This document shows positions 4,268 to 10,976 of a stretch of 64,000 bases of DNA, in pieces. Position numbers and translations under genes: made by a program. Numbering within the stretch: the first letter of the stretch is position 1; each line of letters begins with the position of its first letter. Below the pieces are notes generated by a model. It had not been told where the DNA came from. It worked only from the letters and a program-made list of their open reading frames with translations, and ran no database searches. Origin of the DNA: Octopus bimaculoides (taxonomy: Eukaryota); contig NC_069005.1 in assembly GCF_001194135.2 (NCBI RefSeq), positions 11,497,959 through 11,561,958 of the forward strand. The letters run 5' to 3'.

Positions 4268-5848
4268 GTGTCAAGATCTTGCCAGCCATGTGCGAACTTG
4301 CCAGTCTGCCGTCCATAGCAGAGCTCACCAAGCTCACCAAATCAAGCTCCCTAGCCAGTGGCAAGGCTCCGGGAAAAGACGGCATCCCTTCAGAGATCAT
4401 CAAAGCCGGCAAAAACACTGCTCTGCTTCAGAACCTTCATGAGCTTCTGTGTCAGTGGTGAGAAGAGGGTACAGTCTCTCAGGATATGCGGGATGCTAAC
4501 ATCATTACGCTTTACAAAAACAAAGGTGACCGTGGCGATTGCAACAATTACCGCGGAATATCTCTTCTCAGCACTGTTGGGAAGACCTTTGCCCGCGTAA
4601 TCCTGTCCAGGCTACATCTGCTTTCTTCTCGAATTTATCCAGAATCGCAGTGTGGCTTTAGAAGAAGCATATCAACTATTGACATGATATTCTCCATACT
4701 CCAGCTTCAGAAGAAGTCCAGAGAGCAGAAAATGCCATAATATATGGCCTTCATTGATCTGACAAAGGCCTTTGACTTGGTCAGTAGAAAAGCCTCTTCC
4801 TCCTGCTTCAAAATATTGGATGTCCACCAAAGCTGCTGAGGATCATCGAATCTTTCCATGATGATATGCAAGGCACCATACAGCACATTGGTTCAACATC
4901 AGCCGCCTTCTAAATAAAGAACGGGGTAAAGCAAGGCTGTATCTTTGCTCCTACATTATTTGGTATCTTCTTCTCGCTGCTGTTGTCACATGCCTTCGAG
5001 ACATCAGATGATGGAGTGTTTCTTCACAGTAGAAGTGACGGGAAACTGTTCAATCTCCCGCGTGTGCGTGCCAAGACCAAAATCAGAAACGTCCTGATCA
5101 AGATGTTCTTCGCTGATGATGTTGCTCTGGAATCACACTCAGAAGAAGTCCTGCAAAGGCTCATCAACTGCTTTGAGCAAGCATGTAGAGACTTTGGCTT
5201 AGTTATCAGCCTCAAGAAGACCAACATCATGGGTCAGGCTACATCGCACATCCCAAACATACATATTGGAGACCACAGACTGCGAGAAGTAGAGAAGTTT
5301 ACTTATCTTGGCTCTAACCTACAACCTATCCCTTGATGCCGAGCTCAATATTCACATTGGCAAGGCAGCTGCTGCGGTGATAGTCCGACTCTCCAAGCGG
5401 GTATGGGACAACAACAAACTGATGAAGACCACAAAAATGAAGCTTTACCAGGCATGTGTACTTAACACTCTATTGCATGGCAGTGAAACCTGGACGCTAT
5501 ACACACGCCAAGAGCGTCGCCTAAATATCTTTCACTTGCGCTGCCTCCAGAAAATCCTTGGCATCAAATGGCAGGATCGTGCCCCAACAAAGGTGTCTCT
5601 CAAGCAAGCAGGAATACCAAGCATGTTTGCATCCTCACACAAAGACGTATGAGATGGCTTGGACATGTTAGTCGCATGGAAGATGGCAGAATCTCCAAGG
5701 ACATACTCTAGGGAGAGCTTGCTAGGGGCACTAGGTCTGTTAGAAGACCATTCTTACGGTACAAGGATGTCTGCAAAAGGGTCATGAAAGGCCTGCGACA
5801 TCAGTATTAGGAACTGGGAAGCGTTTGCCAGCAACCGTGGAGATTGCC
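4268..5848 (+). mobile_element. RTE-clade non-LTR retrotransposon, reverse transcriptase region, decayed
   Basis: Motifs GKAPGKDGIPSE, KGDRGDCNNYRGISLLS, PESQCGFR, FIDLTKAFD, FADD, FTYLGS, LHGSETW, HLRCLQKIL across stops and frameshifts; 5' end lost in the N-gap. Confidence 0.93.
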
Positions 5849-5866
5849 AAAATTTGAAACCATATA

Positions 5867-7802
5867 CAGTATCTCACAGAAGTATGTACACCCCTAAAAT
5901 ATTTCAGGAAAATTGCCATCACTCTGATAATATCAAGGGAAATCAAACAAAATTTATGTTGATTAAAAGTATATTATACATGCTAACATTACACAAATTT
6001 GGAACATAAAGCAATAAACATTTTTAAAGATATAAACGAAATATTTATTTTCAAACGTTACAAAAATATGTACACCCTAAATGAGAATTTGCCATATTCA
6101 TTATTTCTTCCAGATATTGTTGATAATTTCAATTCTAATAAATTATTTATTTTCAAACGTTACAAAAATATGTACACCCTAAATGAGAATTTGCCATATT
6201 CATTATTTCTTCCAGATATTGTTGANNNNNNNNNNNNNNNNNNNNNNNNNNNNNNNNNNNNNNNNNNNNNNNNNNNNNNNNNNNNNNNNNNNNNNNNNNN
6301 NNNNNNNNNNNNNNNNNNNNNNNNNNNNNNNNNNNNNNNNNNNNNNNNNNNNNNNNNNNNNNNNNNNNNNNNNNNNNNNNNNNNNNNNNNNNNNNNNNNN
6401 NNNNNNNNNNNNNNNNNNNNNNNNNNNNNNNNNNNNNNNNNNNNNNNNNNNNNNNNNNNNNNNNNNNNNNNNNNNNNNNNNNNNNNNNNNNNNNNNNNNN
6501 NNNNNNNNNNNNNNNNNNNNNNNNNNNNNNNNNNNNNNNNNNNNNNNNNNNNNNNNNNNNNNNNNNNNNNNNNNNNNNNNNNNNNNNNNNNNNNNNNNNN
6601 NNNNNNNNNNNNNNNNNNNNNNNNNNNNNNNNNNNNNNNNNNNNNNNNNNNNNNNNNNNNNNNNNNNNNNNNNNNNNNNNNNNNNNNNNNNNNNNNNNNN
6701 NNNNNNNNNNNNNNNNNNNNNNNNNNNNNNNNNNNNNNNNNNNNNNNNNNNNNNNNNNNNNNNNNNNNNNNNNNNNNNNNNNNNNNNNNNNNNNNNNNNN
6801 NNNNNNNNNNNNNNNNNNNNNNNNNNNNNNNNNNNNNNNNNNNNNNNNNNNNNNNNNNNNNNNNNNNNNNNNNNNNNNNNNNNNNNNNNNNNNNNNNNNN
6901 NNNNNNNNNNNNNNNNNNNNNNNNNNNNNNNNNNNNNNNNNNNNNNNNNNNNNNNNNNNNNNNNNNNNNNNNNNNNNNNNNNNNNNNNNNNNNNNNNNNN
7001 NNNNNNNNNNNNNNNNNNNNNNNNNNNNNNNNNNNNNNGATATAAGCTTCTGCTTATTCCTGTCTGAAGTATCGTCCGATACTTCAGACTTATCGTCCGA
7101 TGAATTTACTTTGTTGACATTCTTCATCGACAGAATTTTTATTCCTTTCAACCTTTCAGTCAAGTCCGCCTTTCTTCCAGTAACATACTGTCCGTATAAT
7201 CTTAAATATTTCTTTAACTCAGGCACAGTAAATACTTCGATAGCTGAACCATCAAGCTGCTTTATATCCATGATAAGACGTAAAACAATAACAATGGCGT
7301 GGGTAGTCTCCGAAAGTTTAATTATCTACATGGAGCGCCGCCTAGCCAAGGAAGATAACCTACTTATAGGAAAGCCCTATACCCTGGGTGAAAATCTTCA
7401 TTGTGATTGAAATGGCACCAAAGGAAAAAGAATTGTCTGAAGATTTGAAGAAAATTATTTTTAATTTGCACAAGAATCGTTTAAGATACAATTTAATTAG
7501 TAAACGAATATATATATATTAGCGTAAACACAGTTGCCAAAGTAATTCAGAAGTACAAAGCTAATGGACGGCTAAGCAATAAACATCGTCCAGGTCGTTC
7601 ATCTATTTTAACTGCACTTCATATTCGCCACTTCCAACGTTGCGTGATGGACGACAGGCATCGTCCCGCTTCATCTTTGGCTCAAGAAATATTTTCTGTT
7701 AGTAGAAAGAGTGTTTCCGTCGAAAGAGTTCGCCGAAGTTTGAATCAGTATAGTCTTCATGGATGCATTCCTCGTAGGAAGCCTCTCCTCAATACCAGAC
7801 AT
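5867..7802 (+). mobile_element. Tc1-family DNA transposon (IR/DR-type left end plus N-terminal transposase), 3'-truncated
   Basis: TA|CAGTATCTCACAGAAGTATGTACACCCCT left TIR at 5867, inner repeat TATGTACACCCT near 6067; from 7412 MAPKEKELSEDLKKII...SVNTVAKVIQKYKANGR...RPGR...VRRSL...RRKPLL with a (TA)n-slippage frameshift near 7510. Continuity across the N-gap 6226-7039 is assumed. Confidence 0.75.
7040..7271 (-). CDS. SAP-domain-containing ORF (3' end lost in gap)
   Basis: FTVPELKKYLRLYGQYVTGRKADLTERLK matches the SAP consensus (LTVxELKxxLxxxGLxxxGxKAxLxERL); 77 uninterrupted codons from ATG to the gap. Confidence 0.7.
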
Positions 7803-9698
7803 GTGTGTTTGCCTCTAGTACCAAAAAGTACTGTCACCAAAATAGGTTGAATGTCCAGTCAGCCATCCTTCATTGCCAGTGTCCAAATGGTCATGTCCAA
7901 TCTTCTTATTCTGAATCTAAAATGACCAGTAGTCATTTGTTAATTCACACAATAAATAAATAAAACAAATGATACTTGTTGGTTTTATTGTTGTTTAATA
8001 TTTTTTTATTCCTTTTTATTTTTGTAAGAAGAAGAAAAAATACTAGAGATAATTTTTATTTTCTTTTTGTATAAAATTATATATTTTTTTTTCACTCAAC
8101 TATATCTCTCATTTTTTGATTTCACATTTTGAAGAAAAAAAGAAAAGAAAAATTTTGAAGGAAAAAGAAAAGAAACATTCTTTTGGTTGAGTCCATATGT
8201 GGGCACAGGGATGGTCGGTATTTATCTGAAATAGAAAATTTGACTTCAGCAGATTTAAAGAACAATCTCTGTATTTTTTCAGTGCTTTTCTTTTCATCCA
8301 TATATTCTCTTGCTTTTGTTTTTCACAAAATAGATTTTCACTCAATGTNNNNNNNNNNTTTTGGTTGAGTCCATATGTGGGCACAGGGATGGTCGGTATT
8401 TATCTGAAATAGAAAATTTGACTTCAGCAGATTTAAAGAACAATCTCTGTATTTTTTCAGTGCTTTTCTTTTCATCCATATATTCTCTTGCTTTTGTTTT
8501 TCACAAAATAGATTTTCACTCAATGATAATTTATGCAATAAATATGAAAAATCTTGGTTGAGGTAAGAACCATACAGCAGAAGGGCGGTAGTATGATTAG
8601 AATATAGCTTTTCACATGTGACACTGTGTATGTTATGACTCTGGTTAAAAAGTTCACCTCACAGTCATGCAGATGATTTGAGGTTTCAATCCCAACATAC
8701 AGTACTATAGTCATATATCTGTCTTCTACCATAGTCAAATAAAGTGCTGTGTAAAATGTGTTACAGGGAAATGATCACATCTATGCATATACATACATAC
8801 ATACATGCATAAATACATAAAACAAAACAGACAAATCTGCACATATACATACATACATACATACAAAAATATCCTGTTGTTGATGTTGAAATTCCAATGA
8901 AGGAGCCTTGAATCTAGGTTAGAAAATGGCTCTTCCTCTATTGGCAAGAAATCTTGAAATGAAACTGAATAATGACTGACTGACATACATACAGACATAC
9001 ACACACATATATGTTTAGGGTATGACTTCAAAATTTTGATATCCTGGAAACGACTTTAAACTGTATTTCACAGTAAGCCCCACTGGTTTGAGAGTTCCAT
9101 GATTTGAGGAGTGTGAACCACATGTTAGCCACTATTAAAGCTAGGCCCTACTCTGCCCCAGGTTAGTAGCAACTCTCAGGGTCCTAGATATGAGTTAATT
9201 AACATATCATGGAAGAAATTCCAAGCAAAAAATCTTCACTACCTTGTGAGGGGCTTGGAAAAGGAAAAGACAAAACAAAGTCAACATCATCAGCAAATCA
9301 AGAAGTGGTGTTCCTCAGATGGTCCAATGTTGTCTTTGACACCCTTCCATCAACTCCAGGGTACATGAAGCTCTCCAGCTCTGTAAATTGATTCACCTAA
9401 GAGCAGGCCACTCCAGTGTAAAACCTATAGCTTGCTGGTCACTGCAGTCATCTTAGTCCACTGAGCCACTGTGGTCAGTCCTCCAAGTCTAAAGAGTGGG
9501 ATCAAATTGTGCAGACTGACCCACACTTTAAGATGGATAAATTGTTGCTAAACAGTTTTCCTAGTGTGTTAATGATTCTGTCAGCTCACTGCCTTAACTG
9601 ATTCAAATACTAACAAAGAAGATGCATTGAATACACATACGTAACATTCTTCTTTTATACTCATTACAAAAATCTTGAATATTTTTGTTTTGTCACAG

Positions 9699-9857: not shown

Positions 9858-10976
9858 GTATTTTGTCTGATGCTCTAAAAATTCTGCCAATCCACTGCCC
9901 TAAATAAATAAATATATATTTATAAAATACTCTTTTATCTATTTGTCAGGAGAAAAAGCAGTGCACATGACTATTTTTAGGGCTCCAAATATTCGTGGAT
10001 TAGAGGAAATTATCCGTGATCCAGAGACCTGATTACAAAACTGAGTAAGTACTATGTTGAGGCCTTGGAGTCATGGACTAGTTACCTAATTTTCATGGTG
10101 GATATATGTGACTGAGATCACAATATCATACCCCAAATAAGTCCGTTGCAGTGTTACTCATTTACAGCTGAGTGGACTGGTGCAATGTGGAATGTAAATG
10201 CTTTACTCAAGAACACAACGCATTGCTAGGTCCAGCAGCTGAAACCACAACCTTGCGATCATGAGTGCAAAGCCGAAACCATTAAGCCATATGCCTTCAT
10301 CAGCACAGAGTGGACTGGGGCAAGTGTTGAACTGACGGTGGGTGGGGGTAGAATACATCTGCCTCACAAGAAAATTATGGTGGGATTTGAAATCAGACTG
10401 AAGGCTATCCCTTAAAAACCATGGAGTAACCAAAGTGTGTTTCATTAGAGGCAAAACAGCAACAGCAACAACTACACCAATGAAAGCAACTTTCCCTTCC
10501 AGTTACCCTGATGGGAAAGGAAGAAAACTTTCAGAGGGAAGGTTCCTTAGACTAATACTTTATTGCCCACCCCCACAAGTATGAATGGCTGTAGGGACTT
10601 GAACCCAGCAAATATATATATATATATATATATATATGAATATATATATCTTTTCATAAGTGAATGAAAGGAATGGAAGAAGCAGTTGGTGCACTACATA
10701 TGTTTCAAAAATGTATGGAATTTCTATTATTTAATGTTAAATATGATATGTAATTTTACCATGCACCTCCTATTCAGGAGCAGCTTACTTGTGTTGGGAA
10801 ATCATTTGCAGTAATGAGTAATTTTGGAAAATGTGAAATGGAAGCAATATACATCTTTTGATTGAAAATAGGAGTGGAAAGTGGTTTTGCTAAACCGCCA
10901 ATCACATTTGTGATTACTTTATGCATTTGATATTGGACAAAGTGGACCACAACCAATTGAATCCCACTACTTTCAT

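What the first reader, a model, noticed from the sequence alone, without database searches (positions are those of the whole stretch)
5867..7802. SAP-domain ORF lying antisense inside a Tc1 transposon (possible cargo or second ORF)
Seen: a Tc1-type left TIR with inner direct repeat at 5867-6080, an N-terminal Tc1 transposase from 7412 (+), and between them an unbroken minus-strand ORF with a SAP motif starting at 7271. The two ATGs are head-to-head 140 bp apart across a CpG-rich spacer containing an AACAATGGCG motif. Established: canonical Tc1 elements encode only the transposase; SAP is a DNA-binding module found in KDZ/Zisupton-type elements and chromatin proteins. Inference: either a two-gene Tc1 family with a bidirectional promoter, or an unrelated SAP element nested in the Tc1. 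The N-gap hides the ORF's C-terminus and the true spacing.
Basis: partly seen in the sequence, partly recalled or inferred. Interest (0 to 1): 0.7.

Follow-up and report, generated by a model that had tools for sequence, protein, structure and literature searches.

The report
ISL2EU transposon fragment nested in Tc1
The SAP-domain reading frame is not a second gene of the Tc1 transposon: it is the start of the accessory gene of a different, already described transposon type (ISL2EU), which landed about 30 bases upstream of the start codon of an old, broken Tc1 copy, so this is ordinary nested junk DNA.

Summary
They include a Tc1 left end with an inner repeat, a minus-strand SAP ORF that runs into the N-gap, and a Tc1 transposase N-terminus with its ATG 140 bp from the SAP ATG.

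The preferred interpretation, a two-gene Tc1 with a bidirectional promoter, is refuted.

- **What the SAP ORF is.** It is the N-terminus of the second ORF of an ISL2EU-type DNA transposon (PIF/Harbinger-ISL2EU-Spy superfamily). That ORF has the domain order SAP, SWIM-like, YqaJ exonuclease.
- **Full-length relatives.** Three mollusc loci were examined, and in each the relative sits tail-to-tail with a THAP-DDE transposase.
- **Its own terminus.** The element's terminal inverted repeat, TATAGGGCTTTCCTATAAG, lies at 7381-7363 (-). It matches both ends of a complete 4.57-kb element in Sinanodonta.
- **Tc1 copies without it.** Two sequenced Octopus vulgaris Tc1 copies lack the SAP block. Their homology to the window resumes at the TA at 7380-7381.
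- **State of the Tc1.** It is dead: a 4-bp frameshift, a truncation at 7802, no DDE domain and no right end.
- **The gap.** It separates two different elements, so reading the ORF across it is meaningless.

Interest is low.

The parts
5865..5866 (+). TA target dinucleotide at the left end of the Tc1 copy
   Evidence: Read directly from the sequence. The O. vulgaris copy L002 also has TA before CAGTATTTCACGG.
5867..6103 (+). Tc1 left inverted repeat of the IR/DR type. The outer repeat is at 5876-5893 and the inner repeat at 6060-6077.
   Evidence: family D10. It is 85-86% identical to the left end of O. vulgaris L002 (5225-5461). It also matches, in inverse orientation, the right ends of L002 (7499-7676) and L001 (6979-7222).
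6104..6149 (+). Tc1 5' UTR segment lying inside the left repeat
   Evidence: Window 6111-6148 matches L002 and L001 5875-5912 at 89-92% identity. That position is 89-126 bp upstream of their transposase ATG.
6141..6225 (+). 85-bp direct duplicate of 6039-6123 that abuts the gap. It is either an assembly artefact or a recent tandem duplication.
   Evidence: family D6, 99% identity. The O. vulgaris copies have no such second copy. A comparable 100%-identical duplicate flanks the 10-N gap at 8349-8358 (family D3).
6226..7038 (.). Assembly gap. It should hide the rest of the ISL2EU copy, its other end, and about 55 bp of Tc1 5' UTR.
   Evidence: The canonical Tc1 stretch CTCCTGGCATTTTTGCAC...GATTTGTG seen in L001 and L002 is absent from the assembled window.
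7039..7271 (-). N-terminal 77 codons of ISL2EU ORF2, whose full form has the domains SAP, SWIM-like and YqaJ exonuclease. Only the SAP part is visible here.
   Evidence: Pfam SAP. It is 85-96% identical to 12 O. bimaculoides gene models. It is 45% identical and collinear with the N-terminus of the full-length ORF2 protein P0039. The full-length relatives carry SAP and YqaJ, and one also has a weak SWIM hit.
7272..7381 (-). ISL2EU 5' terminus. The terminal inverted repeat TATAGGGCTTTCCTATAAG lies at 7381-7363. Inside it are subterminal motifs, GGCGGCGCT shared with the left end of L003 and AACTTTCGG shared with both ends, and the AACAATGGCG motif at 7293-7302.
   Evidence: the repeat matches both ends of the 4570-bp element at L003 9898-14467, and 0.02 matches are expected by chance. 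P0012 shows that the 60 bp upstream of the SAP ATG are conserved in another O. bimaculoides copy.
7380..7381 (.). Probable target dinucleotide (TA, or AT at 7379-7380) where Tc1 homology resumes
   Evidence: Comparison with paralogous empty sites. The O. vulgaris copies read TTTGTG TA CCGTGGTGAAAATC, and the window reads ...GCCCTA TA CCCTGGGTGAAAATC.
7382..7411 (+). Last 30 bp of the Tc1 5' UTR
   Evidence: Alignments A1 and A5.
7412..7802 (+). Tc1 transposase N-terminal DNA-binding region, about 131 codons. A 4-bp TATA expansion at about 7509-7512 shifts the frame. The copy is truncated at 7802.
   Evidence: Pfam HTH_SB and HTH_Tnp_Tc3_2. It is 70% identical at protein level to O. vulgaris proteins annotated as TCB1 or Tcb1 transposase. 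No DDE domain or right end occurs anywhere in the window.

Best explanation
The region is a nest of two unrelated, dead DNA transposons in an Octopus bimaculoides-type genome.

An old Tc1/mariner copy of the IR/DR type inserted at a TA next to a LINE fragment. Later an ISL2EU-type element (PHIS superfamily) inserted into the Tc1 5' UTR, about 30 bp upstream of the transposase ATG and probably at a TA. Its orientation is opposite to the Tc1.

ISL2EU elements carry two convergent genes, each starting close to one terminus. One is a THAP-HTH-DDE transposase. The other, ORF2, has a SAP domain, a SWIM-like zinc finger and a YqaJ-type PD-(D/E)xK exonuclease domain.

The head-to-head ATGs and the CpG-containing spacer are an accident of where the ISL2EU element landed. 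The spacer is 110 bp of ISL2EU terminus plus 30 bp of Tc1 UTR.

Shown here: the identity of both elements, the ISL2EU terminus, and the break in Tc1 homology. Inferred: the order of the two insertions, the target dinucleotide, and that the gap hides the rest of the ISL2EU copy. If the 813-bp gap estimate is roughly right, that copy is an internally deleted derivative.
For: (a) The SAP ORF belongs to a multi-copy family. Twelve O. bimaculoides gene models are 85-96% identical to it. Several of them splice the SAP exon to a SWIM-like exon.

(b) An exhaustive phmmer search found full-length relatives of 554-599 aa in Sinanodonta, Haliotis, Gigantopelta and Mercenaria. They carry SAP, YqaJ and Viral_alk_exo domains, and one has a weak SWIM hit. 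The window ORF aligns collinearly with their N-termini.

(c) In all three loci examined (L003, L004, L005) this gene is followed by a convergent THAP plus DDE_Tnp_4 transposase.

(d) The literature defines ISL2EU by exactly this gene pair, together with a 2-bp TSD and a length of about 4.8 kb (PMC4482050; PMC4122938; PMC9179366).

(e) The L003 element (4570 bp) has the terminal repeat TATAGGGCATTCCAATAAG at both ends. The window carries TATAGGGCTTTCCTATAAG at 7381-7363 on the SAP strand, with shared subterminal motifs and the ATG at a similar distance.

(f) The O. vulgaris Tc1 copies L001 and L002 contain no SAP sequence. They match the window at 5864-6148 and again from about 7380 to 7802.

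(g) The ISL2EU-Tc1 junction lies inside one uninterrupted contig (7039-8348), so scaffolding did not create it.
Against: - Only one end of the ISL2EU copy is visible, so no target-site duplication or second terminal repeat can be shown.
- No YqaJ, THAP or DDE sequence is in the window. Membership therefore rests on homology of 77 codons plus one terminus.
- The 2-bp target reads most simply as TA, whereas the literature gives AT for ISL2EU. The local sequence TATA makes the two indistinguishable.
- No O. bimaculoides Tc1 copies could be fetched, so the comparison copies come from a sister species (82-87% DNA identity).
- No octopus ISL2EU transposase appeared among the top 120 hits.
Confidence: 0.9

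Rival explanations
1. This is a two-gene Tc1 family. The SAP ORF is cargo or a second gene of the Tc1 and is transcribed divergently from a shared bidirectional promoter.
For: The ATGs are head-to-head and 140 bp apart. The spacer has higher CpG observed/expected than the window (0.84 against 0.37). The SAP block lies between a Tc1 left end and the Tc1 ATG.
Against: Tc1 relatives lack the block, and their homology breaks exactly at an ISL2EU terminal repeat. The SAP ORF is homologous to ORF2 of elements whose transposase is THAP-DDE_Tnp_4, not Tc1. All 5 CpGs of the spacer lie in the ISL2EU part, and both transposon bodies have equal or higher CpG observed/expected.
Confidence: 0.02
2. Scaffolding artefact. 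The contig left of the gap (Tc1 left end) and the contig right of it (ISL2EU-Tc1 junction) come from different loci, so there is no single Tc1 copy interrupted by ISL2EU.
For: The assembly is poor here. An 85-bp duplicate abuts the gap, and a 167-bp 100%-identical duplicate flanks the next gap. The window has 20 N-runs. Both elements are repeats, which misleads scaffolders.
Against: Order and orientation are what a single Tc1 would give: left end, then 5' UTR, then ATG. Both Tc1 pieces show similar divergence from the O. vulgaris copies, 85-86% on the left and 82-87% on the right. In any case the ISL2EU-Tc1 junction at 7381/7382 lies within one contig and stands whatever the scaffold join.
Confidence: 0.06
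3. The SAP ORF is an exon of a host gene, either a domesticated or an ordinary SAP-domain protein, that happens to lie next to a Tc1 fragment.
For: UniProt lists the relatives as 'SAP domain-containing protein' gene models. One model, P0040, joins it to exons that look like those of a host gene.
Against: There are at least 12 near-identical copies with differing, patchy splice models. The block has its own transposon terminus. Copies P0001, P0002 and P0004 share a premature stop after about 100 codons, where intact relatives continue for another 460 or more aa.
Confidence: 0.02

Closest known systems
ISL2EU transposons (PHIS / Harbinger-like superfamily; Han et al. 2014, 2015)
   Same: The ORF is homologous to the second ORF of elements that have a convergent THAP-DDE_Tnp_4 transposase. 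The terminal repeat matches that of a complete 4.57-kb element. The gene starts about 100 bp inside the terminus. The insertion is at an AT-rich dinucleotide.
   Different: Only about 340 bp of one end are visible. The YqaJ domain, the transposase and the other end are missing or hidden in the gap. The terminal repeat starts TAGGGC or AGGGC rather than the 'usually GG' reported. The target reads more simply as TA than AT. The papers read here do not mention the SAP and SWIM-like modules of ORF2.
Tc1/mariner IR/DR elements (Sleeping Beauty / Tc1-like; annotated as TCB1 or Tcb1 transposase in O. vulgaris)
   Same: TA target, a CAGT terminus, a left inverted repeat of about 230 bp with outer and inner direct repeats, and a transposase N-terminus with HTH_SB and HTH_Tnp_Tc3_2.
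   Different: The copy is a 5' fragment. It has a frameshift, no DDE domain and no right end, and an ISL2EU insertion interrupts its 5' UTR.
PIF/Harbinger two-ORF elements (DDE transposase plus Myb/SANT protein)
   Same: The same superfamily of DDE transposase and a two-gene architecture in which an accessory DNA-binding protein is encoded alongside the transposase.
   Different: The accessory gene here is SAP-SWIM-YqaJ, not Myb/SANT. The TSD is 2 bp, not TWA.
Zisupton / KDZ elements
   Same: They also contain SAP- or SWIM-type modules. This rests on my own knowledge and was not tested here.
   Different: No Zisupton or KDZ transposase or Ulp1 protease domain was found in the relatives. Their partner is a THAP-DDE_Tnp_4 transposase.

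Membership tests
ISL2EU (PHIS superfamily) | [quoted passage not shown] | tested here: inconclusive
   The window holds only the N-terminal 77 codons (SAP). These are homologous and collinear with full-length SAP-SWIM-YqaJ proteins. The YqaJ part itself is not in the window.
ISL2EU (PHIS superfamily) | A THAP-HTH-DDE (DDE_Tnp_4) transposase in the same element | tested here: not met
   It is absent from the assembled window. It may lie in the gap or may have been deleted. It is present and convergent beside the homologous ORF2 in L003, L004 and L005. The window therefore holds a fragment or a non-autonomous copy, not an autonomous element.
ISL2EU (PHIS superfamily) | Terminal inverted repeats | tested here: inconclusive
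   One terminus is present at 7381-7363. It matches both terminal repeats of the complete L003 element at 17 of 19 positions and shares subterminal motifs. The partner terminus is not in the assembled sequence.
ISL2EU (PHIS superfamily) | A 2-bp AT target-site duplication (target A|AT|T) | tested here: inconclusive
   Only one junction is visible. The local sequence TATA allows either TA or AT. Comparison with the O. vulgaris empty sites favours TA. L003 is equally ambiguous.
Tc1/mariner | TA target and terminal inverted repeats starting CAGT | tested here: met
   The left end reads TA|CAGTATCTCAC at 5865. The homologous O. vulgaris element L002 has both ends. The window copy has no right end.
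Tc1/mariner | A transposase with a paired-like bipartite HTH N-terminus | tested here: met
   HTH_SB at E=1.7e-8 and HTH_Tnp_Tc3_2 at E=6.4e-8, the latter above its cutoff.
Tc1/mariner | A DD(34)E catalytic domain | tested here: not met
   The copy is truncated at 7802. tblastn with DDE-containing relatives finds nothing further in the window. It is a dead fragment of a family member.
   It is absent from L001 and L002 and from the 5' extension of P0014. O. bimaculoides copies could not be fetched.

The most novel reading that the evidence does not exclude
The O. bimaculoides copies may form a short non-autonomous ISL2EU subfamily that keeps an expressed SAP-only mini-ORF of about 100 aa. P0001, P0002 and P0004 share the same early stop. 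Such a protein could bind ISL2EU ends and modulate transposition. Alternatively, the chance head-to-head junction with the Tc1 UTR could act as a divergent promoter. Neither idea is excluded, and nothing here supports either.
Probability: 0.04. Interest if true: 0.35.

Novelty: already known. Interest (0 to 1): 0.1.

Why it matters
It matters mainly for annotation.

- The UniProt 'SAP domain-containing protein' gene models of O. bimaculoides in this family (A0A0L8HXV9 and 10 others) are fragments of ISL2EU ORF2, not host genes.
- Apparent two-gene Tc1 structures in draft cephalopod assemblies should be checked for nesting before they are believed.

A small by-product concerns the ISL2EU accessory protein. 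The literature describes it only as a 'YqaJ protein'. In molluscs it has a consistent domain order of SAP, SWIM-like and PD-(D/E)xK. That is relevant to the still-open question of what this ORF does in transposition.

Tried and rejected
- **Other copies in the window.** I looked for further copies of the Tc1, the SAP ORF, either terminal repeat, or the THAP, DDE and YqaJ domains. None were found.
- **Fetching O. bimaculoides SAP loci.** An exact-protein look-up of P0009 and P0003 returned nothing on record. Co-occurrence within O. bimaculoides itself could therefore not be tested.
- **Octopus ISL2EU transposase.** The third homology search used an ISL2EU DDE alignment. It returned 3285 hits, and no octopus appeared among the 120 listed. 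This is uninformative for octopus.
- **Literature.** A search for ISL2EU together with octopus found no papers.
- **KDZ/Zisupton affiliation.** Rejected, because the partner gene of the relatives is a THAP-DDE_Tnp_4 transposase.
- **The ORF at 6153-7271.** Reading it through the gap was rejected, because the two flanks belong to different elements.
- **AACAATGGCG as a promoter element.** The motif is conserved in another copy (P0012), as expected for any repeat. It is not conserved in the L003 termini, so there is no evidence that it functions.

Full report
**1. Observation**

The window region 5400-9400 was read directly. A Tc1-type left end, TA|CAGTATCTCACAGAAGTATGTACACCCC, begins at 5865/5867 and is unique in the window. 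An inner direct repeat at 6060-6077 matches 5876-5893 at 16 of 18 positions (family D10), which gives the IR/DR layout typical of Sleeping-Beauty-like Tc1 elements.

On the minus strand an ORF starts at the ATG at 7271 and runs 77 codons without a stop to 7041, where it meets the N-run at 6226-7038. Pfam finds a SAP domain at residues 14-42, with E=1.1e-5 and 25.4 bits against a cutoff of 23.9.

On the plus strand an ATG at 7412 opens a Tc1 transposase N-terminus, matching HTH_SB at E=1.7e-8 and HTH_Tnp_Tc3_2 at E=6.4e-8.

**2. The gap**

Left of the gap the sequence is Tc1 5' sequence. The last 85 bp (6141-6225) duplicate 6039-6123 almost exactly (family D6). A second duplicate, 100% identical and 167 bp long, flanks the 10-N gap at 8349-8358 (family D3). 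The assembly therefore leaves un-merged overlaps at contig ends, and the 85-bp duplicate may be the same kind of artefact.

Right of the gap the sequence belongs to a different element (section 4). The 372-codon ORF that a mechanical scan reads through the N-run is meaningless. Whether the flanks are in frame is not a sensible question for this gap.

**3. The Tc1 part**

The transposase fragment is about 70% identical to O. vulgaris proteins annotated as TCB1 or Tcb1 transposase. Two of their loci were fetched from the chromosome-level O. vulgaris assembly: L001 for P0013 and L002 for P0016.

In L002 the element has both inverted repeats, with the left one at 5225-5461 and the right one at 7499-7676. 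The window matches these copies as follows:

| Window | O. vulgaris match | Identity |
|---|---|---|
| 5864-6103 | left inverted repeat | 85-86% |
| 6111-6148 | segment 89-126 bp upstream of their ATG | 89-92% |
| about 7380-7802 | 5' UTR end and transposase N-terminus | 82-87% |

Between the last two blocks the O. vulgaris copies have a continuous 63-bp stretch, CTCCTGGCATTTTTGCAC...GATTTGTGTACCGT. Neither locus contains any SAP-like sequence. The gene model P0014 also extends upstream of the ATG through this canonical UTR (...RNSDLHTVVKIVFIGIK-MAPKEK) with no SAP.

The window's Tc1 is dead:
- A 4-bp TATA expansion at about 7509-7512 shifts the frame.
- Homology stops at 7802.
- No DDE domain or right end exists anywhere in the 64 kb.

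**4. The SAP part**

The 77-aa ORF hits 12 O. bimaculoides gene models at 85-96% identity. This identifies the source genome type and shows that the ORF is a dispersed repeat.

Several of these models splice the SAP exon to a second conserved exon, HVHSIEYHDVSESCSHCIVRCLVIPS...VWVIMSNVTGNVHSADCNC. Three others (P0001, P0002, P0004) read on as ...KQKLISPLGEVLPDLKIFVSCRISQIMT and then stop.

An exhaustive phmmer search with P0005 against 1.84 billion representatives gave 106 hits. They include full-length proteins of 554-599 aa from Sinanodonta woodiana, Haliotis, Gigantopelta aegis and Mercenaria, plus shorter or partial models of 345-450 aa from Mizuhopecten, Haliotis rubra and Mya. Most are themselves multi-copy.

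Pfam on these proteins gives:
- an N-terminal SAP domain;
- in P0039, a weak, sub-threshold SWIM hit at about residue 160, with the conserved C-x-C...C-x-H pattern visible in the alignment of the others;
- a C-terminal YqaJ / viral alkaline exonuclease PD-(D/E)xK domain, at E down to 3e-18.

The window ORF aligns collinearly with their N-termini and is 45% identical to P0039 over 58 aa. The conserved KL(V/I)(T/S)PLGE motif falls exactly at the gap edge.

**5. What element carries that gene**

Three relatives were examined in genomic context: L003 from Sinanodonta, L004 from Haliotis cracherodii and L005 from Mercenaria. In all three, the SAP-SWIM-YqaJ gene is followed on the opposite strand by a THAP plus DDE_Tnp_4 (PIF/Harbinger-type) transposase. 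In L004 the transposase was not annotated and was found by tblastn.

This is the published definition of ISL2EU elements:
- two ORFs, a DDE/HTH/THAP transposase and a YqaJ-domain protein;
- a 2-bp TSD;
- a length of about 4.8 kb;
- found in animals only (Han et al. 2015, PMC4482050; Han et al. 2014, PMC4122938; PMC9179366).

The L003 element is bounded by inverted repeats, TATAGGGCATTCCAATAAG..., at 9898 and 14467, which gives a length of 4570 bp.

The window carries TATAGGGCTTTCCTATAAG at 7381-7363 on the SAP strand. It has zero mismatches to the degenerate pattern, and 0.02 matches are expected by chance. The window also shares subterminal motifs, GGCGGCGCT with the left end of L003 and AACTTYCGG with both ends. 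The ORF2 ATG lies 110 bp inside the terminus, against 103 bp in L003.

The SAP block therefore has its own transposon end. That end coincides with the point where Tc1 homology resumes:
- window: ...GCCCTA TA CCCTGGGTGAAAATC
- O. vulgaris empty site...TTTGTG TA CCGTGGTGAAAATC

**6. Interpretation**

An ISL2EU element inserted in antisense orientation into the 5' UTR of a Tc1 copy, about 30 bp upstream of the Tc1 ATG.

The 140-bp 'spacer' is 110 bp of ISL2EU terminus plus 30 bp of Tc1 UTR. Its five CpGs all lie in the ISL2EU part. Both transposon bodies have CpG observed/expected of 1.1-1.2 against 0.37 for the window, so there is no separate promoter island.

AACAATGGCG is conserved in another O. 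bimaculoides copy, as any repeat sequence would be; P0012 reads ...THAIVIVLRLI-MDIKQL. It is not conserved in the Sinanodonta termini.

The junction at 7381/7382 lies within an uninterrupted contig (7039-8348), so the nesting does not depend on the scaffold join.

A complete ISL2EU would need about 4.2 kb more sequence than is visible. There are two possibilities:
- The gap is far larger than its 813-bp estimate.
- The copy is an internally deleted derivative. This fits better with the short, prematurely terminated O. bimaculoides models. In that case the ORF probably stops about 23 codons into the gap, as in P0001, P0002 and P0004.

This last step is inference.

**7. Limits**

- No O. bimaculoides genomic copies could be retrieved, so the Tc1 comparison uses a sister species.
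- The second ISL2EU end and the TSD are hidden.
- TA and AT cannot be told apart as the target within the local TATA.
- The transposase search did not list an octopus protein among its top hits.

None of these weakens the main conclusion: the SAP ORF is ISL2EU ORF2, not Tc1 cargo.

**8. Verdict**

The two-gene Tc1 and bidirectional-promoter reading is refuted. The nested-element reading is confirmed and made precise as ISL2EU, not KDZ/Zisupton. This is an ordinary nested-transposon fragment of a described kind, and interest is low.

Noticed in passing
window 4983-5860 (+): The C-terminal part of a LINE-type reverse transcriptase (RVT_1, E=3e-8, with an FADD motif) ends just where the Tc1 TA|CAGT end begins. 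The Tc1 itself therefore sits in or beside an older retroelement fragment.
   Followed up: partly
window 8181-8347 and 8359-8525: Two 100%-identical 167-bp copies flank a 10-N gap. This is an un-merged contig overlap, that is, an assembly artefact. It raises the same suspicion for the 85-bp duplicate at 6039-6123 / 6141-6225.
   Followed up: partly
window 7381-7363 compared with L003 9898-9916 and 14467-14449: The ISL2EU terminal repeat is 17 of 19 identical between the octopus window and the freshwater mussel Sinanodonta woodiana. The ORF2 N-terminus is only about 45% identical at protein level. This suggests either strong constraint on the transposase-binding end or past horizontal transfer.
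   Followed up: no
P0040 (O. bimaculoides gene model, not in the window): A 278-aa model fuses the ISL2EU ORF2 N-terminus (SAP plus SWIM-like exon) to cysteine-rich Kazal/OATP-like exons and an acidic tail. It is probably a chimeric annotation, or possibly exonisation of the transposon.
   Followed up: no
L002 5462-5872 (O. vulgaris): The O. vulgaris Tc1 copy carries its own insert of about 410 bp between the inner repeat and the 5' UTR. The window copy lacks it. The Tc1 5' region therefore appears to be hit repeatedly by insertions.
   Followed up: no
window 7039-7802: Both transposon fragments have CpG observed/expected of about 1.1-1.2, against 0.37 for the whole window. They have not undergone the CpG depletion seen in the surrounding sequence.
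   Followed up: no
L001 4516-4692 (O. vulgaris): A weak THAP-like tblastn hit (E=4e-4) lies about 1.3 kb upstream of the Tc1 ATG, beyond a long (TA)n tract that replaces the Tc1 left end in that copy.
   Followed up: no
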